From: Selaginella moellendorffii
Lineage: Eukaryota; Plantae; Lycopodiophyta
Direction of reading: 5' to 3'
NCBI RefSeq assembly: GCF_000143415.4
Contig: NW_003314335.1
Location: 340,113 to 404,112 of the forward strand
DNA length: 64,000 nucleotides
Shown here: positions 5,361 through 43,140 of the stretch, piece after piece
Numbering within the stretch: the first letter of the stretch is position 1
How the letters are laid out: every line of letters begins with the position of its first letter
The notes under the pieces: model-generated
Told to the model about the DNA's origin: nothing
The model's database searches: none
Seen by the model: only the letters and a program-made list of their open reading frames with translations
Made by a program: the position numbers and the translations under genes

Positions 5361-5642
5361 GGGGACAACTGATATCAGCGGGAAAGAAGAGAACCACAAG
5401 AAGTTCGTGGCTTTTCGCGGGGATGGGAACTACATGAAATTCTTGCCCCGGAAAAAAGGATTAAAGGATCACGTTACTTGTCACGAAATGCGCGGACGCA
5501 TTATAAGTAATAATTCCAGAATTGTACCTTTTTTAAAATCATTTTTATAAACCCGTTTAAAAATTAAAATAACTTTAAGGCAATTCAAGTACAACTAGGT
5601 GCAAAAAAAAAAAGTAATTTTTCCAGGCTCAATCTTTCATCT

Positions 5643-6695: not shown

Positions 6696-6982
6696 CGAGC
6701 GAAAGCCCTAAGAGATAGGGTTTAGTGTTTCCAACGGCTGGTCCAACGGTCTGAATCTATACTATTTCACAAAATATGCAAACTAGTATTTATCTGATTT
6801 AGTTTCGTTTAAGGTTTTAATTATCAGTAAAATTTATCTTAAATTCACATTTAAAATAGTAACAAAATAAAAAGTAATATTTATTAAATATATTTTGTAT
6901 AAAATAGGCATATTTTAATAAAGTCAACACTTTATTCACTTTATAAGACTTTCTATTTACTGTGTTTTTCTAAATATAAAAA

Positions 6983-8086: not shown

Positions 8087-11000
8087 TCATCCCCTCCTCT
8101 CAGGATAATGGAAGACCATCAGGGTTCTCTTGAAGATGGGCCGGGATCCGGAGGAACGTCAGGAGGAGGCATCGGTGGATCTGTAGGTGGTATTAACTCC
8201 TCATGATCCCTTTGTACGAAGCATTTTAGCCGCTGCACATGCACAATCTCTGGAGGATCGGCTTGCTGAACGTCATGCCAAACCTCATAAACTTGTAGTC
8301 CAATTTGTCGCAACACTCAATATGGTCCTTTCCATTGCGCAAGAAGCCCCTTAGATAAACCACATACCATAAGATGGGGAAAACGGACTAACACCAAATC
8401 ATCCACTTTGTACTCCGCAGGTGGACAATGATGGGAGTTGTAGCGCCGTTGTTGTCCCACTTGTACGCGGCCTAAGTGTTCGGCAGAATTTGCTCGGACA
8501 AGTGGAAGAATGCTCGTCAAATACTGATCCCATGATCTAGCATCGGCAGCATATGGCAATCGCGAAGGTAAACCTAGCTCCGTTGGTAATATTGGATCAT
8601 GACCATATAGGAGTTTATATGGTGAAGCACCAACAGAACTCTGCACCCCTGTAACATATGCATACCGAAGAGACAGCAAATAACCATCCCAATCCGAATG
8701 CTGAAAGTTCACATACTTCGCAATCATCCCTTTGAATGTCCGAACAAGCCGTTCCACCAGACCGTCTGATTGTGGATGATAAGCACTCGTGAAAGTGTGG
8801 CGAATCCCCACTAAGACATCAAAACATAAAATGCCTCAGCCATAAATGCGGGACCATTATCCGAAAGAATCCGCTGTGGACAAGAATGCTAGAACACCAC
8901 TCAATTGAGGAGGAAGTATCCAACAGCAGTTGCAGAGACGCTAGCAAGAGCACCAACTCCCACCCAATGAGTCAAGTAGTCAAAAGCAATAATAACATAC
9001 TCATTGCCAACAGTCGACCGTGGAAAAGGTCCCATAAGATCAAACGCCACTAACTCAAACAGACGGGAAACTGCAATTGACTCCAACCATCCTTCCGCAG
9101 CACGAGGGGGAGTATTACAAGCTTGGCACCAAACGCAGCTACGCACATACCGGATAATATCACGTCGCATCTCCGGCCAATAGAAAGACCTGCGCAGCTT
9201 CTCGGTGACACGACGGTGTCCCATATGCCCACCTAGAACAGGAGAATCATGGTAGGCATGGAGAAACCGCGGAATAAACACCGAAGGCACCACCAGCTGT
9301 AAATGATCATCAGAATTCGTCCCCACAAAATAAAGAAGGCCATCATCAAGGCGATATTGAGAATGTAAATGCCGGAAAGGCAAGTCATCAGCAAGGGATG
9401 CAGGATTCTCAAACCCATCTCGAAGCCTCCGAATCCATGGCTCAATCTTTTGAGCCTCGCGAACCTCATCAAGAGAAGGTAGATCTTGCTCTGCACCTTG
9501 TGGACACTGAACGTCAAGGACAGCAACTACCGACGGCACAGAATCCTCATCTAGAAAATCCACAGATGCTGGAACAACAGGTTCGTCAGAAACATAAGAA
9601 GTGAGTGGAGAAGGAAGAGGAGCTTGAGAAAGGGCATCAGCATCAGCCATAGAACTCCCTGGGCAATGAACAACATCGAAATCATATATCTGAAGCTTCA
9701 AAGCCCATCGAGCCGTACGACCAACCAGGTTCTTCCGCTTTAATAATGAAGTAACAGCAGCATGGTCACCTTCAAGTAACGTCCGAGAACCATGTAGATA
9801 GGCATGAAGTTTCTCGAAACCCCAGACTGCTGCTAAACACTCCTTCTCCGCGTGGAGTAATTCATCTCCGCTGGTTGTAATGTACGGCTTATGTATGCAA
9901 TGAGATGGCACTGATCCGGCACACTCGAGCTCTCTTGCATCAACACACCTCCAAGACCAATGTTAGAAGCATCCACGCACAAAATAAAAGGTCGAGTGTA
10001 GTCAGGATATGCCAAAACCGGAGGAGTCGTCAATAGTTCTTTGAGATCCACGAATGCTCGCTCACAATCCGGAGACCAGGTGAAAGATGACGTTGATGAC
10101 TTCAGCAACGCTCGCAATGGTGTAGTGCGATCGGAAAGATGATCCACAAAACGACCGAGATACTACACCTTACCCAAAAAGCACTGCACATCATTCACAC
10201 ACTTCGGAGTAGGGAACTTTAGAACAACCACAAGTTTGTCAGGATCAACTTGCAAACCCTCACGAGAAATACGGTACCCAAGATAAGTTGTGTCCTTGGA
10301 CCCAAACACGCACTTTGACCGCTTCAGCTTTAAACCAACGTCGCATAGCCGATCGAACACTTTACAACCATCACAAACGTGCTCCTCCCACGTCCCCTCT
10401 GAGTGGATCAAGACATCATCAATGAAGTCAGCAGTCACCTCTGGCATATCGCAAAGAACCTTGTCCATCATCCGCTGGAAAGTTGCTGGAGCATTGTTCA
10501 AACCAAACGGCATCACCAAGAACTCGTACAAACCAAATGGTGTATGAATAGCAGTCTTAGGAATATCTTCTTCGGCCATCGGTACTTGCCAATACCCAGA
10601 AGCAAGATCTAGCTTGGTGAACCAATGACTTCGCCCCAGACGATCCAAGAGATCAGCAGTGTGAGGAAGAAGATACACATCTGGGATCGTCACTTCGTTT
10701 AACGGACGATAGTCGATGTAAAAACGAATACTCCCATCAAGCTTCATCACAAGATGAGGTTCACATGCCCAAGGACTCCGCGACTTCCGAATAACACCCT
10801 TCTCCAGCATTTCCTTGACGTTTGCTCGTAAAATCTTGATCTCCTTAGGTGACCGACGGCGAACAGGAACCTTGATTGGACAAGCATCCCCGGTTGGAAT
10901 CGAATGACAGAATCCGGAAAACGACGGCAACGCCGATAAGTATGACCAACTTCATCACACGCGCAACAGCGAACATCACGGCCACGACCACGTCCTCGCG

Positions 11001-11872
11001 CTTGTCCTTGGACTCGAGTAGCAGCAGCATCAACCTCCATTGGAACAGGACCATCACCCATAGGAAGTGGAGCGGAAGGACGTGCAGCGAGAAGTGGAAG
11101 AGGCGACGTCTCATAACGTTGTGCCAAGCGAAGAGCATCGTCAAGGGTGGCAGGAGCAAGTGCATGCACAAGTCCGACAAGATCTTGACAAAGTGCTGGC
11201 CACAACATTCCTAGCTTGATCCGCTCCGACATATTTGGCTCCGCACGAAGCAAAAAACTTCGGAAACGAACGCCAAATTGTATCACCGACTCAGATGGCC
11301 CTTGGCGAAGACGATGCAATTGTTGGAAAGCATCATCACAATCATCGGCATGTCCAAAGGTGCGTTTGAAGATGTCCGGGAGAACACTTCAATCCTCACG
11401 AGTGGCTGCGCTCAAACCATTGTACCATTGCAATGCCATCCCTTGAAGACACGTGGGAAACTCACGCAACCGTCGAGCATCATCCCAAGAATGATATGTG
11501 GCAATCATCGTGAAATGATCAAACTAATGGTACACATCATCCCCAAGATTCCCACGAAAGAACTCCGGCCGAATGCGAGGATTGGCACCAAGAGCAAGAG
11601 GAGTTGGACCACGTGCTATGAATGCCACCATCAATTGAGTTTGGTTGTTCAATTACAAGCGCATAGCATCAAGCAATTGGACCAACTGCTGCTCGAGAGT
11701 CAAAGGAGGAGATTGCTGATTTGCCATGGAGACAAATGAAAAAAGAAAGAGCAAAAGAAGAGAAATGAGAAGGAAATGGTAGATCTAGACAATGCAAAAG
11801 CTAGATCTAAACCAAAATCCCAAATCTAAGCACTCCTCAAGGACAATCAAAGGTGCCTCTCATCTCCACCAA

Positions 11873-17136: not shown

Positions 17137-19024
17137 CCGAGGATTGGTGTAACCACCAATTCGTCAACCTCCCTGCGTATTTGGGGGGGGGGGGGGGCTA
17201 CGGGGGGTTCCAAAAGTATAGTAGGGAGAGTGTGGGGGTTGGAGCCCAGTGGAGCCAGTTTGGCCAGGAAAGGCCAGTTTGGCCCAAGAAGGCCAGACCC
17301 AATGTTGGGTGATGAGCTGACCACTGGAAAGTCCAAGGCTAGAGTGAACACGGATCGATAAGTGGGGTAGCTTGGTGAAGTGTTCAAGAGCCGGCTCTAG
17401 TTCCCCCGGGAGATCGACTGGCCGATGCTCCCAATCCAAGTGTGGGTGGCACTCCCTACTTGGATACCAGGCGTGGCTCAACGGAACCTCGCTCTAAGCC
17501 CATGGCTAGAGCACCCAAGGGCGGAAGGCGAGGAGAGTACCCAGGTGGCTCGCGTAAGGCCACGGTGTTCCAAAATGTTGTCCCCAAAGGCCCAGACTGT
17601 GGAAAGGAAGAGGAGCAGTCCTCTGGGGTAGTGACCAAGGACACAGTCGTATGGTGAGGAAGTCCCAGAGGACCGTGGGACTTAGTGGTCAGGCCTGTGG
17701 GCCTCAATCCAGTGGCAGTGTTGGCAAACATGGCCAGGGGCAGAAAGGGACTTAGTGGGGACTGACAGAGGGATATTGGGGAAGGCTATTCCCCTTGTCG
17801 GTGGGCATCCTAAGGATGCTAAGGAGTGGATCTGAGATGACCACTCACGGATGGTTTGTCTAGTCATGGAGAGCCAAGACTGGGATGCATGTGGTATTGG
17901 ACTACTAGTGTGGCAAAGGTGATTGGGCATGGCCTTAGTGTGACAAGCTGCCATGTCGGTGGTACCTTTGAGTGTCGGTCATGGGATCGGACATGTGGAG
18001 CACTTGAACCAAGTGCAATTGTTGAGTGGCATGGATGCCATTCTTGGGGCTAGCAAGTCCTAAGTCCTGAATTGGACTTATGGAGGTTGTGAATGAGACT
18101 CCTCCAAGTGCTCGGAGGTGTGGTTAAGTGACTAAAGTAGAATGGAAAATTTAGTCGCTTACATGCCACTCAACCCTTGCACTTGGTCCAAGTGCTCCAT
18201 ATGTCTGGTCCTAAGACCGACACCCAAAGGTACCACTAACATATCGGCCTATTACGCTAAGGCTATGCCCATTCACCTTTGCCACACTGGTGGTCCAACA
18301 CCACTTGCATCACCATCCCATCTCTCCAAGACTGGGCCGTCCGTCCACGAGTGGTCATCCCAGATCCACTCCTTAGCATCCTTAAGATGCCCACAGACAC
18401 GAGGAATAGCCTTCCCCAACATCCCTTTGTCAGTTCCTGCCAAGTCCTTTTTTTGTCCATGGCCATGTTCACCAACACTGCCACTAGATCAAGGCCCGCA
18501 GGCCCGGCCACTAAGTCCTATTGTCCTCTGGGACTTTCTCACCATGTGACTATATCCGTAGTCACTACACTAGAGGATTGCTCCTCCTCCTTTCCCCCAT
18601 TTGGGACTTCGGGACGATATTTCGGAACACTATGGCCCTACGCGAGCCCCGTGGGTACTCTCCCCACCTTCCGCCTTTAGGTGCTCTAGCCATGGGCTTA
18701 GAGCAAGGTTCTATTGAGCCACACCAAGTATCCAAGTAGGTAGTGCCACCCACACTTGGACTGGGAGCATCGGCCAGTCGATCTCCCGGGGGAATTAGAG
18801 CCGGCTCTTGAACACTTCACCAAGCTACCACGCTTGTCGGTCCGTATTCACTCTACTCTTGGACTTCCCAGTGGTCAGTTCATCACCCAACACTGGGTCT
18901 GGCCTTCCTGGGCCAAATTAGCCTTTCATGGCTAAACTGGCATTTCTTGGCCAAACTGGCTCCACTGCAGTCCTCCCCCTACTATACTTTTGGAGCTCAC
19001 CAAACCCCCCAGGGTCTACCCTCT

Positions 19025-19094
19025 CAGACTCGAACTCCGACTCGGACTCGGACTCAGACTCGGACTCGGACTCGGACTCAGACTCAGACTCGGA

Positions 19095-19129
<35 letters not shown>

Positions 19130-19555
19130 TCTCGGCCTCGGGCTCGGTCTCGGTCTCGGTCTCGGTCCCGGTCTTGGTCTCAATCCTGGTCTTGGTCTTG
19201 ACCTTGGACTCTATCTTGGGTCCTTCTTGGACTCTATCTCAGATTCCATGTTGGGTCCATCTCGAGCTCAATTTTGGACTCCGTCTCAGTCCATCTCGGA
19301 CTCCATCTCGGGTCCATCTTGGACTCCATCTCGGGTCCATCTCAGACTCCATCTCGGACTCCATCTCGGTCCATCTTGGACTCCATCTCGGACTCCAACT
19401 CGGACTTCAACTCGGGTCCATCTCAGACTCCATCTCGGACTTCATCTCGGGTCCACCTCGGACTCCATCTCGAACTCCAACTCGGGTCCATCTCGGACTC
19501 CACCTCGGACTCCACCTCAGACTCCAACTCGGGTCTATCTCGGACTCCATCTCAG
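19025..19555. repeat. Hexamer (GACTCG/GGCTCG/GGTCTC) plus 12-mer (GGACTCCATCTC) tandem array within A LTR
   Basis: Directly visible. Counterparts at 16320-16599, 30211-30440 and 32900-33430. Confidence 0.95.
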
Positions 19556-22500
19556 ACACTTCCACGTGTCATGTGTTGGTCCTTTTGGTTCCCTTTTTGG
19601 AACCTCGCTTATTGCTCGCTTCATGCTCGTTCCTTGAGCACTCCGTTGGGAGTTCCACTCCCGCTCTCGACATTTCAAGTCGGAGCCTTTTAGTCCAAAC
19701 GTGTTACGCTCGTTTGGCTTTTGCTTCGGCCACTACCATATGGCACCCTTTCGGCTCCACTTTGGGGCTTAGGGATTTGTGTCTCACAACTCCACCACCC
19801 ATAGACTAAGTTTGATGTCCTCATCGAACAGTAAACCCTTTTATAAAGTAACACCCATAGGTATTACCATTTCCATCCTTGGCACCTAGCTAATATTTGT
19901 CTATGGTTTGACCCTGAAGGCTCACCATGCGTTGTCCATCCTCTAAGGGGCATAATCTCTTCAACATAGAGACTCATTTGGCCACCTGGGGTGGTTTGCT
20001 CCCTTTTTTTGGTTCAGTTCTCGCTAAACCCGTTAGAGACACCTTCTCTAACTCAATTCCACCACTCATTCTCGAGTAGTCCCAACTTCTATTGACATAA
20101 CCAATTCACCTTGGAACTTTTAATTTTGACTTCTCGAAGTCAATTTCTTTGGTGTCTTTGACACCTTTCACTGCACATATTGTGCAACTTCACTTCCCAT
20201 CCTAGGAAGCTCCCCACTTGAGGGCGCTATCATCCTCCTTTCTATTTTATGCCACTTTTGGCACCAAGTTCCAACCATCGTAAGTTGTTCTAGAGCTATC
20301 TATAGCCCTATCCTTTGGCTACTTCACCACTCTCTCCCTTGAAGCTTTCACCTTTACCAACTTGGAGCATTTGGGAATCCATCCTTGGAAGCACACTTCC
20401 TTTCTCACAATCTATTAACATCCAACACATTAGTCTTCCATGCCTAACTTTGCCATTTGGATTCATTCAAATGAACTCCATGGCCCACACTTGGCCACTA
20501 GTCTTTTGCTTTTATCCATTGATTGTTGCACTTAACAACATAGGATCACTACCTCCATTCTCGAGGTATCTTTTTGGTTCTATGGCAAAGGCTCTACTTT
20601 GCTAAGTCTAGCGGGTGCTCACCCTTAGTAAGTCTCTTTAGCAATTTCTGCTACGGGCTTCGTCCACGGCCCAACTTTGCGACCCTCCCATGGGTCTCTC
20701 CCCAAGACTACTTTCTTGGACTTACTATACCATCGTATTGGCACAACTGATTTCCCTTTAGGTGTCCTTCCCACTTGGTCACGTCGACTAAGCCACACCA
20801 TTATCAATAGTTCAAATCAACACTTTGAACTGGGAATCATATTCCTTAACCTAAACAAATACCTTGTCTTTGTTTAGCCACAAGATCACCTGGTGATCTC
20901 ATCTTGACCCCTTAACAGGTCTATCAATAGGAACTAGGTCTTTCAGACCCTTTTAAATTGTTGACTATGACCCCGGGGGCATCCCCCACACTTGGCGGTG
21001 CGCCCAAGCCAGCCCTTCCGGCCAAGGATCCATAACAATTGAGACTGTGTGTCCCCATCTCATTCACCACGTCCTTGGTGCCTTTGGCACCAAAGTATTC
21101 AAGTTAGATATGCCGAGCTTTCACTCTAAGCAATCTAACTGTGCATCACGACTCCGAGGCATCCCTTGCTTGGCGGTGTGCCCAAACCAGTCTCCTCACC
21201 GAGAGTCCATAACCACCGAAATATGAGTGTCCTGATATTCCAAACCATCACCACGCCCTAGTGATTTGGGATTCGAACCCAAGCACTAGAGGGTTGGGAC
21301 TCAAACCCAACCTCTATATATGCATCTACGGACAGCATCACCCTAGATGCCTGGTGTGACTCCCCACGCCGGTGCACCAACTTATACTTAAAGCGCATTA
21401 TAGATCACAACTTAGGAACCTAGTTCCCCCACACTACCAAGTCCTCTCACTTGACAAGTTTCTGATCATGCATGGACTCCTCCATGCTCGGCACCATAGG
21501 CCACCCTCTTTTGAAGTTAGCACCTTCAACTAGGGGATTTGTCCCCCTGACTTGCCAATCTCACTTAGCAAGTCATCCGGCCACCGTAATATGGTTCATG
21601 CATAAGCATGAAAGTCCTTAACCATCGACTTTCGTTCAAAGCCCTCTCTTTGAACACTCAGGAACTACTTCCCCAACCTTGATAGCCTCGCCTCATGGCC
21701 AGCTTTAAGACCACGCTTCTGCAGTGCCACTTTAATTTTGCGCGCTTTAGGAACCATTTACCCTTGGCCTTTCTAGGTACTAAGCTACCCAGAATCGTCT
21801 TTGGGAACTTGAAGCAACTCTGTCCCTTAGCTTGCTAAGGCCTCTCCTTTCGCAAGCTTTCCAATTGCTATATGGTCTAGCATGGACAATTCCATGCTTT
21901 AGACTCTTCATGGCACCACGGTTGCTAGTAACAACATACTCGAGCGCCCACTTGATTCTCCACTCCCAACTGACATAACCACCCTTGGTTATGCTCTTTG
22001 ATTCCTATGGTTTGGTTCTATCCCCTTACTACTTGCTTTTGGCTTCACACCTTTCCTTCGGTCATTCTCCTCCAGACTAGGAGGATAGCTTTGCACTTTC
22101 TATCATACCTTAGCAAGTATTTTTAGGGATGAACCTACCCAATAGCCTAGGGAGTGGTTCCTCAATCTAGGTATGCTCACCTTATAATCCCACACACCAA
22201 GATTAACGTTGCTACATATGGGCCTTTATATGCCCATCACTAGCCTTGCCAAAATTCCATCTTTGGCTTTGTCCAATTTGGGTTGACAGTCTTCTCCTGT
22301 CTCCGCAACCTTGGACATTTGGATAGCACCTTCTATCCATCATTCGCTAGGGACTTAGTCCCTTGGGCCTCATCTATTGCCCTCGTGACATCAAATACCA
22401 CCTCCGGGTGTTCTAGAGTGTTTGGGTGTCCCAATGATGGCCTCTTTGACAATGAGTATTCCCCTTTTCAACATTGACTTACTATATCGCAACATAAGCA

Positions 22501-30210: not shown

Positions 30211-32899
30211 GAGATGGACCTGAGATGGAATCCGAGATGGAGTCCGAGAAGGACCTGAGATGGAGTCCGAGGTCGAGACCGAGACCGAGACCGAGACCGA
30301 GACTGGGACCGAGACCTGGACCGAGACCGAGACCGAGACCGGGACTGAGACCGAGACCGAGGCAGAGGCCGAGACCGAGCCCGAGTTCGAGACCGAGTCC
30401 GAGTCCGAGTCCGAGTCCGAGTCCGAGTCCGAGTTCAAGTCTGAGAGGGTGAAAGCCCAAAGCGTTCGTCTACCAGACCCTAGGGGGTTTCGTGAGCTCC
30501 AAAAGTATAGTAGGGGGGAGGACTGCAGTGGAGCCAGTTTGGCTAGGAAAGGCCAGTTTGGCCCAAGAAGGCCAGACCCTGTGTTGGGTGATGAATTGAC
30601 CATTGGGAAGTCCAAGACTAGAGTGAATACGGACCGACAAGCGGGGTAACTTGGTGAAGTGTTCAAGAGCCAGCTCTAGTTCCCCCGGGAGATCAATTGG
30701 CCGATGCTCCCAATCCAAGTGTGGGTGGCACTCCCTACTTGGATACCAGGCGTGGCTCAACAGAACCTCGCTCTAAGCCCATGGCTAGAGCACCCAAAGG
30801 CGGAAGGCAGGGAGAGTACCTAGGTGGCTCGCGTAAGGCCACGGTGTTCTGAAGTGTTGTCCCCATGTCCCAGACTATGGAAAGGAAAAGGAGCAGTCCT
30901 TTGGTGTGGTGGCCAAGGATACGGTCACGTGGTGAGGAAGTCCCAGAGGACCATGGGACTTAGTGGTCAGGCCTGTGGGCCTCGATCCAGTGGCAGTGTT
31001 AGCAAACACGGCCAAAGGCAAAAAGGGACTTAGTGGGGACTGACAGAGGGATATTTGGGAAGGCTGTTCCCTTTGTCGGTGGGCATCCTAAGGATGCTAA
31101 GGAATGGATCTGGGATGACCACTCACGGATGGTTGGCCCAGTCTTGGAGAGACAAGACTGTGTTGCAATTGGTATTGGACTACCAGTGCAGCAAAGGTGA
31201 TTGGGCATGGCCTTAGCATAACAGGCTGCTATGTCGGTGGTACCTTTGAGTGTCAGTCATGGGATCGGACACGTGGAGCACTTGGACCAGGTGCAAGGGT
31301 TGAGTGGCATAGATGCCATTCTTGGGGCTAGCAAGTCCCAAATCCTGAATTGGACTTATAGAGGTTGTGAATGAGACTCCTCCAAGTGGTCAGAGGTGTG
31401 GTTAAGTGACTAAAGTAGAATGGAAAATTTAGTCGCTTACATCCATGTGATGAGAATACCAACTCATCCTCTGAGTACACCCCTAACTCCTTGGGTTGTT
31501 CCAGCATTTATTAGAGGTAGCCCCGGCTACCATTTCAAGGACTTGTGTCCTCTTCTGTATTTGACCTCCCATGGTCATCAATTCTGGTCTCAAAGTTATG
31601 AGCACCAGCCTCAACTATATGAAAGTAATCTTGTGACTCCTTTATTGTTTTGGAGTCTGCATCTTTCCCGTGATCCCACTATAGTTGTTTACCACAACTA
31701 TGTTAGCCTGTTTGCTGCGTCAAACGCTCATCTGGATCACATCCTCACTCAATGAGGAAAGCCTTACACTGTTCCCAAGATCCCAAAGTCGTTCCATCAT
31801 TGGCCCTTTTCTATCCACCACTTTGCCTACAAGTTCACACGTGAACTGTAGTGGAGAGCCATGTCTTCCCGACTTGTAAGGAACAGCTCCAATACCAAAT
31901 TGTAAGCGACTAAATTTTCCATTCTACTTTAATCACTTAACCACACCTCTGCCCACTTGGAGGAGTCTCATTCACAACCTCCTTAAGTCCAATTCAAGAC
32001 TTGGGACTTGCTAGTCCCGAGAATGGCATCCATGCCACTCAACCCTTGCACTTGGTCCAAGTGCTCCACGTGTCCGGTCCCAAGACCGACACCTAAAGGT
32101 GCCACTGACATATCGGCCTATTACACTAAGGCCATGCCCATTCACCTTTGCCACACTGGTGGTCCAACACCACTTGCATCACCATCCCATCTCTCCAAGA
32201 CTGGGCCATCCGTCCACGAGTGGTCATCCCAGATCCACTCCTTAGCATCCTTAGGATGCCCACAGACATGGGGAATAGCCTTCCCCAACATCCCTTTGTC
32301 AGTTCCTGCCAAGTCCCTTTTTCGTCCATAGCCATGTTCACCAACACTGCCACTAGGTCAAGGCCCGCAGGCCTGGCCACTAAGTCCCATTGTCCTCTGG
32401 GACTTCCTCACCATATGACTGTATCCGTAGTCACTACACTAGAGGATTGCTCCTCCTCCTTTCCCCCATTTAGGACTTCGGGACGACATTTCGGAACACT
32501 GTGGCCCTACGCGAGCCCTGTGGGTACTCTCCCCACCTTCTGCCTTTAGGTGCTCTAGCCATGGGCTTAGAGCGAGGTTCCGTTGAGCCACACCAAGTAT
32601 CCAAGTAGGGAGTGCCACCCACACTTGGACTGGGAGCATCGGCCAGTCGATCTCCCGGGGGAACTAGAGCCGGCTCTTGAACACTTCACCAAGCTACCCC
32701 GCTTGTTGGTCTGTATTCACTCTAGTCTTGGACTTCCCAGTGGTCAGTTCATCACCCAACACTGGGTCTGGCCTTCCTGGGCCAAATTGGCCTTTCCTGA
32801 CCAAACTAGCTCCACTGCAGTCCTCCCCCTATTATACTTTTGGAGCTCACCAAACCCCCCAGGGTCTGGGAGATGAACACTTTGGGCTTTCACCCTCTC

Positions 32900-33430
32900 A
32901 GACTCAAACTCGAACACGGACTCGAACTCGAACTTGAACTCGGACTCGGACTCGGACTCAGACTCAGACTCGGACTCAGACTCGGACTCGGACTCGGCCT
33001 CGGCCTCGGCCTCGGTCTCAGTCTCGGTCTCAGTCCCGGTCTCGGTCTTGACCTCGAACTCCATCTCAGGTCCTTCTCGGACTCCATCTCGGATTCCATC
33101 TCGGGTCCATCTCAGGCTCAATCTTGGACTCCGTCTCGGTCCATCTCGGACTCCATCTCGAACTCTATCTCAGGTCCATCTCGGGTCCATCTCGGACTCC
33201 ATCTCGGGTCCATCTTGGACTCCATCTCGAGTCCTTCTTGGACTCCATCTCGGACTCCATCTCGGTCCATCTCGGACTCCACCTCAGACTCCAACTCGGG
33301 TCCATCTTGAACTCCATCTCGGACTTCATCTCGGGTCCACCTCAGACTCCATCTCGGACTCCAACTCGGGTCCATCTCGGACTCCACCTCGGACTCCAAC
33401 TCAGGTCCATCTCGGACTCCATCTCGGACA
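32900..33430. repeat. Hexamer plus 12-mer tandem array within the 5' LTR of element A
   Basis: (GACTCG)n grading into (GGACTCCATCTC)n. Confidence 0.95.
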
Positions 33431-35432
33431 CTTCCACGTATCATGTGTTGGTCCTTTTGGTTCCCTTTTTGGAGCCTCGCTTATTGCTCGCTTCATGCTC
33501 ATTCCTTGAGCACTCCATTGGGAGTTCCACTCCTACTCTCGATCTTTCAAGTCGGAGCCTTTTAGTCCAAACGTGTTATGCTCGTTTGGCTTTTGCTTCG
33601 GCCACTACCACATGGTACCCTTTCGGCTCCACTTTGGGGCTTAAGAATTTGTGTCTCACAGTTACCTTGTAGGCAACTTTGTAAGCCCACAACACATTAA
33701 AAAGCATGGTATCCCAATCGCTGGCACTTGCATTGCAAAGCTTGGTCATGGTGTCACATAGTGTCTTATTGGTTCTCTCAACTTGGCCATTTGCTTGAGG
33801 ATGATATGGTGTCAAGTGTCAAAGGGAAATGCCATACTTGGCTGTGAGAGTTGCAATGACCATATTAATAAAATGTGTACCTCAATCACTCACAAGCTCA
33901 AGTGGGCAGCCAAAGTGCATGATGGTGTTCTTGTAGAGGAATCCTGCTACCTTCTTGGCCATGTTTTTGTTGAAAGCCTCAACTTCTACTCACTTGGTCA
34001 CATAATCCATGCAGACCAAGATATAATGATTCTGGCGATGTCACCTTGGCTTGAATGGCCCCATAAAGTTGATTCCCCACTTGTCAAAAGGTAGAGCTGG
34101 AATAATTGAATGTAACAGCATTGCATCTTGTTGAGTAGGACACCCAACACATTGGCATGGATCACAACTTCTCACAAATTTTGCCACATTCTGCTGGAGT
34201 GTTGGCCACCAATAACTAGTTTGGAGCACAAGCCGTATAGTCGCTGCTGCTGCATATGCCCATCATAGGGAGAATCATGGGAAGAGACAATCACCTGCTA
34301 CACCTCATAAGGAAGAATGCAGCACCTCAGAACACCATCTCTTCCTTCCTTATAAAGCTGGCCAGCAATCAAGGTGAAAGCTGGTAACGAGTAAAGAAGC
34401 CTCTTTTGTGCCACCTTCGACATATCATCAGGAAATCTGCTAGCAACAAGAATTTCCATGATACCCTAATACCACACCAGCACAGCTAAAACCTGGTATA
34501 AAAGCAGCTCCTCTGCTTCTGATTGGGTTGAGAGTGCATCTGGAATTTCTGTAGAAACCTGCTCACCCTCCAACAAGAAAAGAGGAGTATTGAGCAGCTC
34601 ATCATAAACTCCTTCCTTGGCAGGTTGTCCTGGTAATCTTGAAAGACAATCAGGATCACATCAAATTTTTCAGGCTTCAACACGATCTCAAATTTGAATT
34701 CTTGAAGCAAAAGCAACCAGCAAGTGATTCAGCTATGTCGATAAGGCTTATTATAAGATACTGCAGCTCTTGGTGATCCAAACAAAAGAGGAATGGCATT
34801 CCCAGCAGATAGTGGCAATATTTGGTAACAGCAAACACAATTTCCAAGCCATTGTGTTCAGTGGCTGTATAATTCTTCTCAACCAGAGATAACTACCTAC
34901 TCAAATAAAATATGGGATGATCCCAACCATTAACTAGCTGGCATAAAACAACACCAATAGCAAAAGTAGAAGTGTCAACATGCACATAGAATTTCAAATT
35001 CCAATCTAGCAGCTTAAGAATACATGCTGTGCCTCAAACGAAGCGCACGCTGTGTATGGGGTGACATGCGTTGTTAACCATCAATACAATCCCGCGTCCC
35101 CGTGGTGTCGTGTCGACAACCCTAGGGTAGGGTAGTAGAGTAATGATTAGATACCTCGAGCAGTTTTTGTAAAGCCACCGTTTATGGGAATCATTTTGTT
35201 TTAGGGTTACCAAAACAGAGTACCCTAATCTGTTTAGGGTTCTCATTTATTTTTAGGTTACGTCGTGCCACCTTTTTTAACCACGTCCAGAATATTCTGT
35301 CACCCTTTCTTTTGACGTTGGTTCTTAGGAATATCCGGATAGTATACGATATGCATACCACGTGATTTTTAGCGACTGATACGTAGCATAGGGAATATAC
35401 ATATCCGTATGTATATAATATATACCATATCA

Positions 35433-37587
35433 TTCACGGCATTGTGACGCTCTTATATCAGGAAGCCATTGTATTACCTTATCTTTTTTACAAAGCGATA
35501 AAGGTAATATGGCTTTGTTTAATGCCTTAATTATAATGTTTTTAAGGCGATTAAACGAAAAACCGTTATTCATGAATTTTCCTATTAATTTTTTTAATTT
35601 CTGCTAAGAGATTTTGTTCCTCTGAGCAAAGATAAAAAAGTAGTAGGACCTGACCCACGATAATTTTATAAGAATTATTCTTAGGTCGATTCGAATCAAA
35701 GTGGACAAACTGGCAAATAGAAAAAGATAAATGATCCCTTTTATCATATTTGCTAGTAGTGAAAGAACCAGTTTCTTTGTCGTTAATTTTTAAATTAAGA
35801 CTAAGAAAATTGATGTTACCACACCATAGCGTATTTTGATTGGGTCAATCATCGTTTGTTCAATCAACAAAAACTGCAGTGGGTAAATCCAGTACGGGTT
35901 TGACTTGACGCGCGGTTGGTCAGGGTCCAGAAACCGTAGGATCTGTGGGTTGTTAAGGACCGTTAAATCGTCCATGTAGCGAGAAGCGTCTTTGAACAAA
36001 ATCAAGGCTTCCGTATCTCCCAGTCGTTCTAGTCGTTTTATGAAGTTGGATTCATAAAAACACAGATATAAGTTACACCATAGCGGTGAACATGAAAAAC
36101 CCATGGGGATTCCCACAACTTGTTTCCAGACTTTGTTACCGAGTTGAACAAATGTATGGCTAATAGCCCAGGTGTTCCAGAGAATGAGAGTATCGGCATC
36201 AACGCGTATAGCAGTTTTAGTGCGAGCGGAGGCCAACTTCCACTGCGCCGAGAACTTGCCATTCCGATTATGAAGAAACAGGACTTGGCGCTTTTTGCGT
36301 TTAAGCTGCCAAGCTCTGTTAATGAGCTTGGTTAAGACGTTTATCAAGCCGTCTGGTCCATTAAGTGGAATCGCTTCATAACATCTTGATATATCCCCAG
36401 AGAAGGCACAATAAACGCGCTCGGGGAGATTGATGGAGAACTCCGCCATTGAGGAGAGTGTCCAGAAGCAGTTAGTCTCTGTACGTAGCAGGTTACAGAT
36501 TGCTGCATGCGAATCGTGAGCTAAGTCCAACAGGGCAGAAGAAATCTCCTGTAAGCAAGCCGTAATGGCTTTAGTGATCTCCGAAAAGATGCAGTCGGCT
36601 GCATTTGTGAGCCACCGGAGTTTGTCCTTATGAGCCTTGTATATGCACATAAGATATGGTAATTTGATCCGTTCCGGGTTGAAAGTTAGCAACACCTCCT
36701 CCTGAAGGAGCGAATTGATACATTCAACCGGTGTAGTCGCTTGTGCACTGTTATGCAGAAGCGGTTCGAAGTTGGAGCTTCGTACACGGTTCATAGCTTC
36801 CAGCCGGACGAGCCTGATACACAGGAAGGAAGGAGTGTTGGCAGCCTTGTCCGTTCCCGCGATATACAGGTGTTTTTGGAGCCACTGGATACGAGCAGTA
36901 GTAGCCTCGTGGTCCCAAGTATCGGCCGGGGCGTTGATATCGCCGGACAAGGCACTTGATACAGCGTTTTTGATCAGCCGCTTGACAAGCGGAAACTTGT
37001 CCTGGTCCCAGATGCAGGTGAGATCCGGAGATTTTTGGATCAGATCCAGCCACCCGTGATTGAGTTCCGTTAAAATACGCTCCTTATGCACTGGGCAAAG
37101 GGAAATATGATTAAGTCCTTTGTCAAGCTCACATTTTAGATCTCTCCACTGAACAATAAGGCGATCAAGAGTCTTAACGTGTTTTTCAGTCTGCTCCCCC
37201 AAGGGAGAAAGGTATGGTGTAAACGCGGTGATAGCTTCACATCCACAGTCCGGGATGTTATCGGTATCAAATTCACAAAAGACTTCTACTGGTTTGTAAA
37301 GCAAAGAGCGTATCTCATTCTGGTAGGTCCAGCCAAAAACCATATTATCATCAAAGGAAACCATAGGTAGGTTCATTTGAATGAGTATATCTTTGTATAG
37401 CGTCTTTGGTTTTATCAACTCAAATCCACGACTAATATAGTTGAGATGGACGTAAACCTTAGTTTCATCAACGATATTTTCAATCCTGAATCGTCCGGCT
37501 TGGTTCCGGATGATTTTTTTCACAACCTTGTAGTAAGCACATAGAATTAGAGAGAATACTGAATGACAAGGGGCGTATTTTATATAT
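35433..37587 (-). pseudogene. PLE reverse transcriptase (frameshifts near 35810 and 35590)
   Basis: Motifs CGC..HVKTLD..LDKGLNH, TDKAANTPSF, LPYLMCIYKAHK..RWL, NCFW, DISRCYEAIP, QVVGIPMGFSCSPLWCNLYL..YE, RYMDD, WIYP. After the frameshift: FLSLNLKI..SKYDKRD.LSF.ICQFVHFDSN.P (PLE thumb), to TGA at ~35433. No in-frame ATG at the start of the open frame and no GIY-YIG motif seen. Confidence 0.88.
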
Positions 37588-37726
37588 CAGACAAGACAAA
37601 ATATATAAGTACGCCGTGCGCAATGTATATATAATAACAAGGTATTACAGGGATACATTGGACACTTGGGAACATGTTTCTTTTTTCCTTAAGGCCAGAG
37701 AGCCATCAGAAAGAAAACAACTGATT

Positions 37727-39741
37727 CTAGGTTGCCTTGGGGCCTCGGCCTCCACGGCCCTTTGTTCCACCTCCACCTCGTCCGCGATTCCAGTTTGTGC
37801 GCGGACTTGCTTTCTTGTGGCGTTTGTCAGGCGGTACCTCATGTTCATTGTCGCTGTCGATGGCCTTGGCTTTTGCTTTGGCAGGACTCGCCGCCTTCTG
37901 TGCCGTGTTGCCAGATTGAGGCTGCGCTTTCTTCTTCGTCGATGGAGTAAGTGGAGTGCTGTATGGTTTTGCTCTGACTGGAGTGACCTCCTCAAGGATG
38001 GAAGAGTAAGTCTCCGTGATGACCGGTTCCAGAGCCTGTTCTCGGAGAAAGTTTCCAAGATGTCGAGGCAGTAAAATCTCCTCAATCCTGGTCTTTGCCG
38101 GTCCCGCAGGTACACAAGTGATAGAAGTGCGAGATGGCTTTGCAAGAACTTGCTTCGCGCCAGCTTGAGTCCACCCGGAGATCTTCAGGCCAACCGCAAT
38201 TTGCAATACATACGTTTCCAGGTTCCGCAGGAAATCCAGGAAAGCAATAACCCTGTCAACCTTGCGCGGTTCATCAGGAAAATAATCCTCCAGGTGATTC
38301 ATGATGAACCAGAGCACACAGTCCAGCCAAGCCAGAATGCGACCAATGTGGCAGCCAGGGCGCTCGTTGAAGCAGGAACACTTGACAAAAGGGCGGAGCT
38401 GGCTCCAAAGTATGGAGGTGGTTGCTCCTTCAGCTCTTAGCGTGGTAGCCCATTTCTTGCACCACACAAATAGCTGGTTGATCACAGTTCATGCCAAAGT
38501 CGCGGGAAGACCATGTGCCCAACGGGACCTTTTTCCTTTGTAATCAAGTATCAGCGTCAATAGGGGAAAAGATACCAACCGGCATACCTTCTTGCCAAAG
38601 TTTGTAATCGATGCCTTCCAACGTGGAGAATTTTTCCATGACTTGAGGGGAGCCGAACGGGTACCGCCAAAGAGAACGGTCGCGAAACGGATCGTGCCTC
38701 GGAGTTTCGCCGGCGATTACATCCCATTTCAGTGGTTTCTTCTCCATGACGATGTGAAAAGTTAGTGTCCACCATGCATTGACATCGACTTGAGCAAAGA
38801 GCGTGAGGGGCCTGCTCCACCTCGATGATACGTAACAGAGCTTCTCTGTTGCGGGCTCCAATGAGAAGGAGGCAGTGCTGGACCCAGGGGACTGGAGCGT
38901 ACATTTCATCCGCACACCCGAGTTCCTGAATCTCGTCCAGCCAGAAGGAGTTCTGCCACCAGAAAAAAAGAGACGTATGATCAGAATGAATCTTTTTTTG
39001 AGAAATAAAGCAGAAAAAAAGAAGAGGCATGATGAGCGAAGCCGCGAAGCGGTACGACCGTCTCCGTCGTAACACAGCAAGGCCCCGCCGCTGCTTCATC
39101 TCCCATCCGTACTTTTTCCAAGAATCTCATAATCCATGTGGTCATACAGAACGAACAAACCTACAGGGAAGAGAAATACCTGTAGGAGAGGACGTTAGCG
39201 ACTAGTCATGAAAAATAATTTTTTCAAGGCTAAACAATGCAATCTAGTTCACATTAGCCGAAAATCCCATCGGGTAATGATCTCCAGAGCCTGAGGTCTG
39301 CAAGATGTGAAGCCAGCAGTGTTACACGAAAAAAGATGTGCATGCCGGAGGATGAAAGTCAAAAGAATGCAAACGGTGAGCGGTAGTGAACAACCTCGTG
39401 TTCTTGAGTCAAGTCGTCCGGCTCAGGGACGTCCGCCATGTCCGGGGTTAAAGCGATAGTGCCGTCGGCATGACTACCGCCATTCTTTTCCTTGCAAGTC
39501 GCCGCTACAACCAGAAAATGTGATTTTCTTAGTAACGAGCGAAAAACAGCCGGTTTGTTACCTTGACACGCTGAGCACCGATACGGCGGGTTTTGGGATC
39601 AGATCGACATCAAAACAGAAGTCAAGTGCCTACACGGGGAAGAAAGCGAGCTACTGAGAAGCATACGGATTTCAACCACAAAACAAACCTTGCTGATGAT
39701 CGCCGAGGCGAACCGTCATCCAGAGGAAGGAAGTAATACAT
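37727..39741 (-). pseudogene. Multi-exon ORF1 of the PLE, unknown protein with K-rich/RGG C-terminal tail
   Basis: Several GT-AG introns with pyrimidine tracts (donors near 39688, 39561, 39394, 38588). Last exon (252-aa ORF) ends NWNRGRGGGGTKGRGGRGPKAT. In-frame TGA at 39599-39601 and 38489-38491 in my reconstruction. Middle exons uncertain. Confidence 0.55.
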
Positions 39742-40097
39742 CCTAGCCTTATAAATGATACAACATATAGGAGAATTCTTGCAAAACCAACAATTGAATT
39801 CAATAATAATAGTGTCATGGGCAAGAGGATTAATTGTAAGCCCATCAAAAAATATAAAATTTTTGCAACTATTTTGATCGCATCTGGGCGGGCGCTAGCG
39901 AACAAACAACAGACGAAGACGCCGCCCGCGCGAGTAAGCAAGAAAACAAAAACCACTTCGTAGCGCGGTGAACTGGGCGAAGGCGCCGAGTGCGCCTCGT
40001 CGGAAGATTGCAGGAGTGAAGTGCCATGGCTTTGCATGCCTCTTGCCTAAGTAGGGCAAGAGATAAGATCAGCCACGGCGTGAAGTCCTGGCATGAG

Positions 40098-40672
40098 TAC
40101 ACGCCGTGCCTCAAACGAAGCGCGCGCCGTGTATGGGGCGACGTGCGTTGTTAACCATCAATACAATCCCCCGTCCCCGTGGTGTCGTGTCGACAACCCT
40201 AGGGTAGGGGAGTAGAGTAATCCTCGAGCAGTTTTTGTAAAGCCACCATTTATGGGAATCAGGGTTACCAAAACAGAGTACCCTAATCTGTTTAGGGTTC
40301 TCATTTATTTTTAGGTTAACCTTTTTTAACCACGTCCAGAATATTCTGTCACCACCTTTGTGTCGTCACCTTTCTTTTGACGTTGGTTCTTAGGAATATC
40401 CGGATAGTATACGATACGCATACCACGTGATTTTAGCGACTGATACGTAGCATAGGGAATATACATATCCGTATGTATATAATATATCCCAGCATTGTGA
40501 CGCTCTTATATCAGGAAGCCATTGTATTACCTTATCTTTTTTACAAAGCGATAAAGGTAATACGGCTTTGTTTAATGCCTTAATTATAATGTTTTTAAGG
40601 CGATTAAACGAAAAACCGTTATTCATGAATTTTCCTATTAATTTTTTAATTTCTGCTAAGAGATTTTGTTCC
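40098..40672 (-). repeat. Pseudo-LTR: 5'-truncated second PLE copy (RT C-terminus plus 3' UTR)
   Basis: Near-identical to 35021-35620 with several small indels. Confidence 0.92.
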
Positions 40673-41607
40673 AACAAAGGAGCTTTCCGGTGGAGAGCAG
40701 GAAGAGAGACATTTCGGGAGTGAGTTCTTGATTGAGCTCTACGGTCGGATGGTGGATGCTCGTGTTTGATCGTTTGGTTTAGCGATTGTGGTTATCTCCA
40801 TCGAGGGGCCTCACAAGCGCTCCATTTGCCAGAACCTTGTGACATTTCCTTGAGGAGTACTTGATATGTAGGTTACTAAATAAAGTGATTTGCAAGAAGG
40901 TGACAAATTTAGCAGCTTAGTTTTGAGTTTACAGAGGAAGATTGCTAGCGATGCAGTGACTTCAAGCGCTTCACTCACACTGTACATAGATTCGAAGTTG
41001 TAGAACATAAAAACTTCTTTAAAAAAATAAAATTCTCAAAGATTTACTTTCAAAAAGCTTATATGTGGAAGTCCTTGCCATCACCCTCACCCTCTCCTCC
41101 ACCGCACAATTCTGCCTGAGTCAAATCCTCAAAAGGACCAAGAAATCAACCCAAAAAAATCAACTTTTCGGAATTCAGATTAAAAAGAAGACGGAAGGAT
41201 ATGTTGTTAAGCTCGAAATAAGTATCCATCATATAATGAAGAAAATCATAACAGATCACAGCTGATATTACACACCATAGGAAACTTAAATACTAGCAGC
41301 CTTGCTGAAAAAATCACGCCAATCTAAAAACGAATCATCTTACGTGATAGTTGGAAGCGACGGACGATGAAATAAAAAGAAGAGAAATGGAAGTAAAAAG
41401 AAAATGTTAAAACCAAAACTGAAGCCAAAACATGAAGCTAAAAAAGGTGGTGGTGAAGAATGATGATGCCTGTGAAGAATGTGCTGGAGGAAGATGATGG
41501 TGTAGACCTATAGAACCTCTTCCATTTCTGTGCACCTCCACAGAAAGAGACTGCAACCTAAACGCCTCTGCAAATCACTGGTTTTCATCGTAGTCATTCT
41601 GATTGGA

Positions 41608-43140
41608 ATGTCTGGCCCTAAAACCTCAATCTCTCACATGCAACGGTTTGGATTTTTTTTCCGATCGAATGGCTGGGATTCTCTTAATCCAAAAGTTTAT
41701 TTATATTCTAACTAGTATTATAAATAAACTTTGGATTAAGAGAATCCAAGAATATTCTTTAGAATATGCCAGGCATTTTCTAGTATCTTCTAGATAGACT
41801 ACAGCATTTTGTTTTGTTTTGTTTTGTTTTTTTTTCTTCTGACGGATAGGTTTAGAGCAAGAATGAAGCGTAAGTCTTCTTTTCTGGTGACGGCCTCATC
41901 GATGACTCGAACCGACTTCCGATTGGCGCATCCTCTAGTGACTGTGAGGCCAGGCAGCGTAGTCAAATTCGATTTTGAAGCTGATGAGGATGAAAGGGGC
42001 AAGGTTCTCAAAATCAACAAGGTGGACCTGGAGCTACTTGATTATTTCATGCAGGATCATTTGTATCCCGCTATGCAGAAGGCGGCATGGTGCTATCGGC
42101 GGAGGACGAACGAAAATAAAATCAGCGCCCTTGCGTCGGCTTTCTTCCCAGTCTTCACTTTCCTCTCCCCTAGAGCAAGCGACGCAGATTTGCTCAGGCC
42201 CTATGAGCAGGGTGATCCCCTTTTGGATAGTGTTAATGAGATAGCGGCACAGGAGGCGTCGAGCAGCAATGGGGAGCAGGTCATGATTGACGGGCAGAGT
42301 CGGGAAAAGCTTGAGTGGGTGCAGGAAGATGGTGCTGATCTAGGTCCTCGACAAGCAGTTGATTTTAGAGGTTACGCATCGCTCATCGCAGATGAATCTT
42401 CAGAAACCAACGAGTCGATGAGCATCCTCATTTGCGATGCTAAGCAGAAAAACTTCATCTGGGAACCAGACACGAACGAAAATTCAGATCTTTACCAACT
42501 ATGCGACTATACATGCTGTGCTGCGGTTCCTAACATCGACAGTGGAAGATTCAAGCCAATCCATATGTTGGTTTTAGCTGATGGTGATTATGGGGTTGCA
42601 GTCCTCCATGTGGAAGGATACTTAGGGGTTGGCAGGGATAATGTGATCACAGACGCAGCGTTTGATGTCTTCCTCGGCCACATGGAGGCAAAGGTGAGTT
42701 TTTTTAATAGTTTTTTTTTGCTTCTTTTTTTGTATTTTCAGGAAAACAAGGGGGACCAATGGAAAAGCTTGAACGATCAGGAGAAAGCGTATATTCGTGA
42801 AAAGTACCAAATCACCCTGAACAAAAGCAGGTTGAGGATGCAAAAACTACACATGGTCAGCGACATCCCCGTGGACAGAAAACTTGTGGTAGGGGAAATC
42901 AACTTCTATCCTCTCGCCAGAATCTGGACGAAGTTCCCCATTGCTTACCCCAGCCAGAGGTGGAGTACGGACGACTACATTTTTATTGCTGGGATGCTGC
43001 GGGTGCTCTTTGGAGATAGAGTCTTGTTATGGAAAAAACAAACTCTGGAGGCAATCGCTGCATCCAGGAATTCGGAGTTGGTCAGTCTCGGACGTCAGCT
43101 TCCAATCTTCCCACCCGACGTCGTTAAAAGTGCTGACTAG
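41608..43140 (+). CDS. Uncharacterised protein with a restriction-endonuclease-like D...DAK...QxxxY motif (exons 41608-41645, 41850-42693, 42742-43140)
   Basis: 443-aa open frame including an in-frame 48-bp T-rich GT-AG intron. Segment VDFRGY...SILICDAKQKN...DLYQLCDY. Start exon tentative. Confidence 0.6.

What the first reader, a model, noticed from the sequence alone, without database searches (positions are those of the whole stretch)
35021..40672. Endonuclease-less Penelope-like retroelement with an accessory gene, sitting interstitially
Seen: an RT with DKAAN, GIPMG..CSP..NLYL..YE, RYMDD, IYP and YDKRD motifs; a 575-600-bp direct repeat made of the RT C-terminus plus 3' UTR; no GIY-YIG on either side of the RT; no TSD; plant telomere motifs in the 3' repeat. 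Established: PLE RTs are the sister group of telomerase RT and form partial-tandem pLTRs, EN-deficient PLEs prime on telomeric overhangs and have been reported from Selaginella, and Naiad/Chlamys PLEs normally carry an N-terminal GIY-YIG. Inference: this is a Naiad/Chlamys-type RT that lost its nuclease, travels with a separate spliced gene, and has landed inside a TE nest rather than at a chromosome end. Whether this family is already catalogued cannot be determined here.
Basis: partly seen in the sequence, partly recalled or inferred. Interest (0 to 1): 0.85.

Follow-up and report, generated by a model that had tools for sequence, protein, structure and literature searches.

The report
Decayed nuclease-less Penelope-like spikemoss retroelement
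This is a dead copy of a jumping gene in the spikemoss Selaginella moellendorffii whose copying enzyme resembles telomerase and which has no DNA-cutting enzyme; the group it belongs to was published in 2021, so it is a further family of a known kind, not a new kind.

Summary
On the minus strand of 35018-40672 lies a Penelope-like element (PLE). It has 578/603-bp pseudo-LTRs built from the RT C-terminus plus the 3' UTR. Two frameshifts break the RT tail. No GIY-YIG nuclease and no target-site duplication were found.

The window is Selaginella moellendorffii. The RT model matches only telomerase structures. Its nearest relative (42% identity) is the 28S-rDNA-inserting "PLE-X" family of the same plant. 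In a 94-sequence tree both sit with Chara braunii and about 60 metagenomic sequences in a clade where no nuclease was detected. Every relative with a detected nuclease has it N-terminal (Naiad/Chlamys type) and lies outside that clade.

Craig et al. 2021 (PMC8557442) already described this endonuclease-less PLE-X group. They reported the CxC motif, an intron-separated N-terminal extension with a Cys motif, and its occurrence in Selaginella and Chara. The "accessory gene" is that group's standard ORF1, not a passenger.

This copy differs in three ways. It is a distinct family. It lies neither in rDNA nor at a telomere. I found no hammerhead ribozyme.

One side observation may be new. A palindrome made of the plant telomere repeat recurs in the 3' UTRs of three lineages. 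Earlier notes of this scan cover the sister rDNA family on other DNA, not this family.

The parts
40095..40672 (-). 5' pseudo-LTR. It is the 5'-truncated tail of an upstream tandem copy: the last ~95 RT codons (intact here, ORF 40390-40677) plus the 3' UTR.
39127..40094 (-). Start of the full unit, the 5' UTR, and the first small exons of the public gene model (39690-39719, 39395-39505, 39253-39297). None of these is confirmed by reads.
37727..39126 (-). ORF1, also called the N-terminal extension. It lies in two open pieces, 38560-39126 and 37730-38488. It is homologous to the ORF1 of the rDNA family and of metagenomic relatives. No Pfam family and no fold match were found.
38535..38586 (-). 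52-nt GT..AG intron inside ORF1. A contig of run X5 shows it spliced out, at exactly the public model's boundaries.
38348..38395 (-). Conserved ORF1 Cys motif RPFVKCSCFNERPGCH (CxC-x6-C-H). The public model's intron 5 (38381-38462) would remove its start.
37742..37786 (-). RG-rich (RGG-like) tail of ORF1, followed by a stop at 37727-37729. Relatives have the same tail, and it is predicted disordered.
35793..37586 (-). Open RT piece of 598 codons. There is no ATG at the start of the conserved region (VVKKIIRNQAGRF, 37500-37526).
37236..37250 (-). CxC motif (DCGCE) upstream of the RT core.
   Evidence: PMC8557442
36837..36854 (-). TDKAAN, the DKG motif in its DKA form.
   Evidence: PMC8557442
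36084..36404 (-). RT motif A (FSGDISRCYEAIP) to motif B (GIPMGFSCSP). The 94 residues between the catalytic D and the GIPMG are an IFD-like insertion, modelled as a helix plus a beta-hairpin.
35967..35981 (-). RT motif C (RYMDD).
35433..35844 (-). RT C-terminal (thumb) part split over two further frames (pieces 35569-35844 and 35433-35603). The breaks are near 35836 and near 35589-35595.
35018..35620 (-). 3' pseudo-LTR: RT tail plus 3' UTR. The element ends at about 35018-35020.
35221..35241 (.). Telomere-repeat palindrome GAACCCTAAACAGATTAGGGTAC (3' copy). A second CCCTAAA lies at 35200-35206.
40279..40299 (.). The same palindrome in the 5' pseudo-LTR.
33576..35017 (-). Flank, not part of the element. 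It is a Ty3/gypsy RNase H (LKLLDWNLKFYVHVDTSTFAIGVVLCQ starts at the junction) and integrase on the same strand. The matching gypsy RT is not on the other side of the element.

Best explanation
A decayed, non-autonomous copy of an endonuclease-less Penelope-like retrotransposon of the PLE-X group. PLE-X is the EN-minus branch related to the N-terminal-EN Naiad/Chlamys PLEs. This copy belongs to a family distinct from the published 28S-rDNA-specific family of S. moellendorffii (42% RT identity).

Shown:
- One unit runs about 40094 to 35018 on the minus strand. A 5'-truncated tandem copy precedes it, which gives the pseudo-LTRs.
- The unit encodes ORF1 (a helical N-terminal domain, a Cys-motif domain and an RG-rich tail) and a telomerase-like RT with CxC, DKA and an IFD-like insertion.

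Inferred:
- The pseudo-LTR drives transcription.
- ORF1 acts as a nucleic-acid-binding partner of the RT.
- Having no nuclease of its own, the RT primes on a 3'-OH that already exists (a break, a nick or a chromosome end).
- The lack of a TSD and the non-contiguous flanks fit insertion at a pre-existing break, or a later rearrangement.
- The copy can no longer make a full RT.
For: - Species and locus: 100% match to SELMODRAFT_425444.
- Fold: the RT model (pLDDT 76.5) has TERT as its top 18 PDB hits (E 8e-7 to 3e-2). The first group II intron RT is at E 0.36 and R2 at 0.57.
- Sister family: P0002/P0003 at 42-44% identity, E 1e-120. P0003's locus L001 lies inside a 28S gene, as published for PLE-X (PMC8557442).
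- Tree of 94 RTs: the window is sister to that family (SH-aLRT 100). Both lie inside an EN-free clade of 59 (support 99) and of 70 (support 100) that includes Chara braunii proteins.
- All 12 relatives in which EN was detected have GIY-YIG N-terminal to the RT and lie outside that clade.
- CxC, DKA and the 94-residue A-B spacer are present.
- ORF1 is conserved next to the RT in other lineages.
- No GIY-YIG in six-frame pieces.
- Decay: two frameshifts and 2.3% pseudo-LTR divergence, mostly transitions.
Against: - No curated reference sequences (PLE-X1_sTam, Chlamys, Naiad, Athena, Coprina, Penelope, TERT) could be put in the tree. It is therefore unrooted, and the link to the published clade rests on the 28S-resident sister family, the Chara members and the motifs.
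- No hammerhead ribozyme was found, although the paper reports canonical ones for PLE-X. Rfam at E<=10 and a core pattern both failed. The same search also failed on the rDNA family, so the method may be blind to them.
- A very divergent nuclease could escape Pfam.
- Only one genomic copy was read, so target choice is unknown.
Confidence: 0.85

Rival explanations
1. It is a telomere-attaching EN-minus PLE of the Coprina/Athena kind. It once capped a chromosome end and is now interstitial, and its CCCUAAA motifs once paired with the G-rich overhang.
For: - The C-strand telomere heptamer occurs twice in element sense in the 3' UTR.
- S. moellendorffii does have telomeric PLEs (PMC4209133; earlier scan notes).
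Against: - The nearest relatives are the 28S-resident family and Chara PLE-X, not telomeric elements.
- CxC and DKA motifs are present.
- No tandem telomere repeats lie in or beside the element.
- The motifs lie about 180-220 nt from the 3' end, and one is half of a palindrome.
- No hammerhead ribozyme was found.
- The window-wide motif count is at chance.
Confidence: 0.05
2. It is an ordinary N-terminal-EN Chlamys element whose nuclease domain was deleted or mutated away in this copy only.
For: The copy is decayed (frameshifts, indels). The 5' region 39127-40094 has no recognisable coding content.
Against: - None of the 70 representatives in the clade has the EN found by an HMM built from the EN+ relatives.
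- The position upstream of the RT is occupied by a conserved ORF1.
Confidence: 0.04
3. ORF1 is a captured host gene (a true accessory or passenger) and not part of the element's own machinery.
For: It contains at least one spliceosomal intron. It has no Pfam family or fold match.
Against: - Homologous ORF1s lie directly beside the RT in the rDNA family, in at least six metagenomic loci and in 69 database proteins on short element-sized contigs.
- Intron retention is a known PLE trait (PMC8557442, PMC4209133).
Confidence: 0.05

Closest known systems
EN-minus 'PLE-X' families of Selaginella and Chara braunii (Craig, Yushenova, Rodriguez & Arkhipova 2021, PMC8557442)
   Same: - No GIY-YIG nuclease.
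- CxC motif before the RT, and DK(A) in place of DKG.
- A long A-B spacer.
- An N-terminal extension (ORF1) carrying a CxC-x(1-8)-C motif and at least one intron.
- Pseudo-LTRs.
- Host genus.
- The RT is sister to the 28S-resident S. moellendorffii family and groups with Chara proteins.
   Different: - Only 42-44% RT identity to the 28S family, so it is a separate family.
- This copy is not in rDNA and has no 28S-like tail.
- No canonical hammerhead ribozyme was detected.
- I could not determine whether this family is in the paper's supplementary library, which is not held here.
Chlamys / Naiad PLEs (N-terminal GIY-YIG)
   Same: RT type: CxC, TDKAAN and the IFD-like insertion. These are the only nuclease-bearing relatives that the searches retrieved.
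   Different: They carry the nuclease, and this element and its whole clade do not. They lack the ORF1 seen here.
Athena / Coprina telomeric EN-minus PLEs (Gladyshev & Arkhipova 2007, as cited in PMC8557442 and PMC4209133)
   Same: No nuclease. They must use pre-existing 3' ends. They carry telomere-repeat-like sequence in the 3' region.
   Different: Those elements sit at telomeres, end in reverse-complement telomere repeats next to a hammerhead ribozyme, and lack the CxC motif. None of that is seen here.
Telomerase reverse transcriptase (TERT)
   Same: It is the best and only clear structural match of the RT model, as expected for a PLE.
   Different: No sequence-level match to any PDB chain. 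No TEN/TRBD architecture was shown. The RT is encoded by a repeated, decayed mobile element.

Membership tests
Penelope-like elements (PLE) | RT closer to TERT than to LINE, group II or retroviral RTs | tested here: met
   Foldseek on the RT model: ranks 1-18 are all TERT (E 8e-7 to 3e-2). Group II RT is at 0.36 and R2 at 0.57.
Penelope-like elements (PLE) | Pseudo-LTRs from partial tandem copies | tested here: met
   35018-35620 against 40095-40672. The repeat starts inside the RT coding tail.
Penelope-like elements (PLE) | Hammerhead ribozyme in the pseudo-LTR (present in most PLE clades) | tested here: not met
   No Rfam hammerhead at E<=10 in 34950-35800, and none at E<=1 in 34000-42000. 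No CTGANGA..GAAA core in the element.
Penelope-like elements (PLE) | Retention of spliceosomal introns | tested here: met
   The 52-nt GT..AG intron 38535-38586 is absent from a contig of run X5. That X5 is RNA is only a guess by the run record.
Naiad/Chlamys clade | CxC motif upstream of the RT core | tested here: met
   DCGCE at 37236-37250. C93 and C95 are invariant in alignment A2.
Naiad/Chlamys clade | DKG motif changed to DKA / DK | tested here: met
   TDKAAN at 36837-36854. D225, K226 and A227 are invariant in A2, and the EN+ relatives P0138, P0140 and P0142 have the same motif.
Naiad/Chlamys clade | IFD-like insertion between RT motifs A and B | tested here: inconclusive
   94 residues lie between the motif A Asp and GIPMG, modelled as a helix plus a beta-hairpin at pLDDT 76-91. 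No canonical PLE was available for a length comparison.
Naiad/Chlamys clade | N-terminal GIY-YIG endonuclease | tested here: not met
   No PF01541 hit in 30 six-frame pieces. An HMM built from the relatives' EN found none in the clade.
PLE-X (EN-minus Chlamys-related group) | N-terminal extension with a CxC-x(1-8)-C motif, separated by intron(s) | tested here: met
   KCSCFNERPGC at 38348-38395. It is conserved in 41 aligned ORF1s. One intron is confirmed. The intron that would join ORF1 to the RT has no read support.
PLE-X (EN-minus Chlamys-related group) | RT groups with the Selaginella 28S family and the Chara families | tested here: met
   Tree with SH-aLRT 100/99/100. Identity of members. 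The tree is unrooted and has no curated references.
PLE-X (EN-minus Chlamys-related group) | Spikemoss families insert at one site of the 28S gene | tested here: not met
   No rRNA anywhere in the window. No 28S similarity in the element ends or flanks. The paper reports this for its two spikemoss families and does not make it a defining trait of the group, since the Chara families are genome-wide.
Athena/Coprina | Location at or next to telomeric repeat arrays, with reverse-complement telomere repeats at the 3' end | tested here: not met
   No arrays. Only single heptamers lying 180-220 nt from the end. The flanks are gypsy and unknown sequence.

The most novel reading that the evidence does not exclude
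The palindrome built from the plant telomere repeat (ACCCTAA-loop-TTAGGGT) may be a functional cis element. It sits 200-520 nt after the RT stop in this family, in the 28S-specific family and in one moss-like metagenomic lineage. These lineages share no other alignable 3' UTR sequence. It could be an RT recognition or priming hairpin inherited from telomere-using ancestors, or a paired 'telo-box' promoter element of the pseudo-LTR. If so, it offers a concrete handle on how nuclease-less PLE-X elements are expressed or integrated.
Probability: 0.25. Interest if true: 0.55.

Novelty: new member of a known kind. Interest (0 to 1): 0.33.

Why it matters
Craig et al. left open how PLEs without a nuclease insert away from chromosome ends. 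This copy shows that S. moellendorffii holds a second, deeply diverged PLE-X family that can lie outside rDNA and outside telomeres. The searches also show that the clade is far larger than the few published plant and Chara families: about 70 representatives at 50% identity, and many ORF1+RT contigs in environmental assemblies. This adds to a known catalogue and does not establish a new mechanism. The recurring telomere-repeat palindrome and the uncharacterised ORF1 are the two points worth an experiment.

Tried and rejected
- **Hammerhead ribozyme.** Four Rfam scans and a core pattern found none in the window or in the rDNA family.
- **28S link.** There is no rRNA in the window. There is no short-word similarity between the element or its flanks and L001.
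- **Pre-insertion site.** Neither flank has a paralogue in the window. The gypsy RT that should precede the RNase H is not upstream of the element. The empty site could not be rebuilt.
- **Other copies of this family.** None appeared among annotated proteins or in the scan's index. One contig in run X1 (35226-36054) differs from both window repeats, so at least one more copy or allele exists. X1 depth is not a copy number.
- **Expression.** Two RNA-seq raw-read runs gave 0 and 2 reads. Support is weak.
- **ORF1 function.** There was no Pfam family. Foldseek found no PDB match. The best VIA Z was 5.7, on a generic helical bundle. Atlas TM was at most 0.22. No nuclease fold was recognised, but the model is only moderate (pLDDT 64.5).
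- **PDB by sequence.** Nothing was found.
I built no joined spliced ORF1. The public model P0001 was used as given, and its exons were mapped one by one.
- **Tools.** Complex prediction was not used.
Full report
**1. What is there**

The window is Selaginella moellendorffii. The RT ORF is 100% identical to part of SELMODRAFT_425444 (P0001, 967 aa). The element lies on the minus strand.

A direct repeat, 35018-35620 against 40095-40672, is confirmed. It shows 13 mismatches in 562 aligned columns (10 of them transitions) and 7 indel events. In element orientation the 5' repeat begins abruptly inside the RT C-terminal coding part. This is the pseudo-LTR structure of a Penelope-like element (PLE), formed by a 5'-truncated upstream tandem copy. 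One full unit runs from about 40094 to about 35018.

If both repeats were identical at insertion, 2.3% divergence means roughly 1-2 million years. That uses plant substitution rates of 0.7-1.3e-8 per site per year. The rates come from my own knowledge, and this is an assumption, not a measurement.

**2. The RT**

Pfam RVT_1 scores only 23 bits, and no PDB chain matches by sequence.

An AlphaFold model built on 12 homologues (pLDDT 76.5) finds telomerase catalytic subunits as its 18 best PDB matches. The first group II intron RT and R2 follow far behind. That is the expected signature of a PLE.

The RT tail is broken twice:
- Near 35836. A contig from another copy carries 7 more bases there.
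- In an A-run near 35589-35595. The 5' pseudo-LTR copy is in frame there.

The conserved N-terminal RT region starts without an ATG.

**3. No nuclease**

The 30 largest stop-to-stop pieces on both strands of 35000-40900 gave no GIY-YIG hit at E<=1.

More telling is the family-wide picture:
- An exhaustive search found 2012 relatives.
- An HMM built from the nuclease domains of three relatives found a GIY-YIG in 12 proteins. Pfam confirms PF01541 above its gathering score in two of those three (P0138, P0142); P0140 scores 19.1 bits, below the 22.6 cut-off.
- In all 12 the domain is N-terminal to the RT, which is the Naiad/Chlamys arrangement.
- In a tree of 94 RTs all 12 lie outside a clade of 70 (SH-aLRT 100) that holds the window.

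The missing nuclease is therefore a trait of the clade and not a deletion in this copy.

**4. Which family**

The window RT is sister (support 100) to a second S. moellendorffii family, P0002, P0003 and P0146 in the tree. P0004, P0015 and P0018 belong to the same family by 73-93% identity to one another. The window shares 42-44% identity with this family.

The locus of P0003 lies inside a 28S rRNA gene. A further copy has 28S pieces beside it. Craig et al. 2021 (PMC8557442) described exactly such elements as 'PLE-X':
- They are EN-minus families nested among Chlamys.
- They occur in two Selaginella species and in Chara braunii.
- They have the CxC motif and a unique N-terminal extension 'likely separated by an intron' that holds a CxC-x(1-8)-C motif.
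- In spikemoss they insert at one 28S site.

Chara braunii proteins fall in the same EN-free clade in my tree. The window has the CxC (DCGCE), DKA (TDKAAN), a 94-residue A-to-B spacer and the ORF1 Cys motif KCSCFNERPGC.

I therefore file it as a member of the published PLE-X group, but as a separate family.

**5. The 'accessory gene'**

The region upstream of the RT (37727-39126) encodes a protein homologous to:
- the N-terminal extension of the rDNA family;
- a 500-590-aa ORF1 that sits about 70-200 nt upstream of the RT on metagenomic contigs.

Sixty-nine such ORF1 proteins were found, none with a Pfam family. ORF1 is thus part of the element.

Its model (pLDDT 64.5) shows a helical N-terminal domain, a mixed domain around the Cys motif and a disordered RG-rich tail. 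No fold match was found.

Evidence on the introns of the public gene model:
- A 52-nt GT..AG intron (38535-38586) is removed in a contig of run X5, exactly as in the public model. The record only guesses that X5 is RNA, and the run carries a different organism code from X1.
- Model intron 5 would delete conserved residues, and an X5 contig reads across its acceptor.
- Model intron 6, which fuses ORF1 to the RT, would delete the conserved RG tail and has no read support.

Against that, neither Selaginella family has an ATG at the start of the conserved RT region, whereas the moss-like relatives do. Splicing into one protein therefore remains possible.

**6. Where it sits**

Immediately 3' of the element is a Ty3/gypsy RNase H followed by its integrase, on the same strand. 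The 5' flank is not the gypsy RT and has no paralogue in the window. There is no TSD, no rRNA, no telomere array and no 28S-like tail.

This fits insertion at a pre-existing break, or a later rearrangement. One copy cannot decide between them.

**7. Telomere motifs**

CCCTAAA is at chance level over the window. However, one copy forms the palindrome CCCTAAACAGATTAGGG in both pseudo-LTRs. The same kind of palindrome (ACCCTA..TAGGGT) lies 200-520 nt after the RT stop in:
- the rDNA family, at three loci;
- metagenomic locus L009, with a variant in L008.

Seven other lineages lack it. Shuffles predict 0.235 matches in the 135 kb examined.

This is a real recurrence of modest significance. Telomere priming is not shown. 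A paired telo-box (a plant promoter motif, from my own knowledge) is an equally good reading.

**8. Verdict**

I score this a new member of a known kind, with interest 0.33.

Earlier notes of this scan already treat the sister rDNA family on other DNA (s1-431175, s1-432095). They also flag this window's ORF1 and 3' UTR (s1-419215, s1-419216).

Noticed in passing
L046 1780-5689; L047; L048; L054 1976-6122: In marine and other metagenomic lineages of the same EN-free clade, a 518-640-aa ORF follows the RT directly (4-nt gap or overlap). It has the ORF1 hallmarks: '..YLDHFVVYFIHNALQFFPD..' and an RG-rich tail. In the moss-like and Selaginella lineages ORF1 precedes the RT. This is either a second permutation of gene order or tightly packed tandem units.
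   Followed up: partly
L006 1-123 = 6609-6731; L009 4-120 = 5396-5512; L003 4887-6091 = 10282-11486: Two element-sized metagenomic contigs end in 100% identical overlaps, which suggests tandem or circular assembly (units of 6608 and 5392 bp). A 1.18-Mb eukaryotic contig carries a relative with 1205-bp pseudo-LTRs that are 99.9% identical, so it looks young. These contigs may come from mosses, but the source was not verified.
   Followed up: partly
L001 14148-14165, L004 10307-10324, L005 10501-10518, L009 5472-5500, L008 4279-4305; window 35221-35241 and 40279-40299: A palindrome made of the plant telomere repeat (AACCCTAA / TTAGGGTT) recurs in the 3' UTRs of three PLE-X lineages that otherwise share no alignable nucleotide sequence.
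   Followed up: partly
L001 9602-9867 and 14741-15006: The 266-bp direct repeat flanking the rDNA-family copy overlaps resumed 28S sequence, since LSU alignment restarts at 14775. Part of that 'pseudo-LTR' may therefore be duplicated 28S target and not element sequence.
   Followed up: no
window 41809-43140 (+): A 443-aa ORF with no Pfam match lies about 1.1 kb beyond the element's 5' end. Its nature is unknown.
   Followed up: no
window 41670-41751: A near-perfect 38-nt-arm hairpin gives weak sub-threshold Rfam hits to plant miRNA precursor models (MIR7696, 35 bits against a gathering score of 83). A MITE-like foldback is more likely than a miRNA gene.
   Followed up: no
window 17234-19788 and 30513-33660; 33040-33480: There are large repeated blocks about 13.3-13.9 kb apart with internal inverted repeats, and 12/23/35-bp tandem repeats that read as (S/D/P/R)-rich pseudo-ORFs. 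These are probably long LTRs or satellite-bearing parts of the surrounding gypsy nest. An assembly gap (run of N) lies near 29.3 kb.
   Followed up: no
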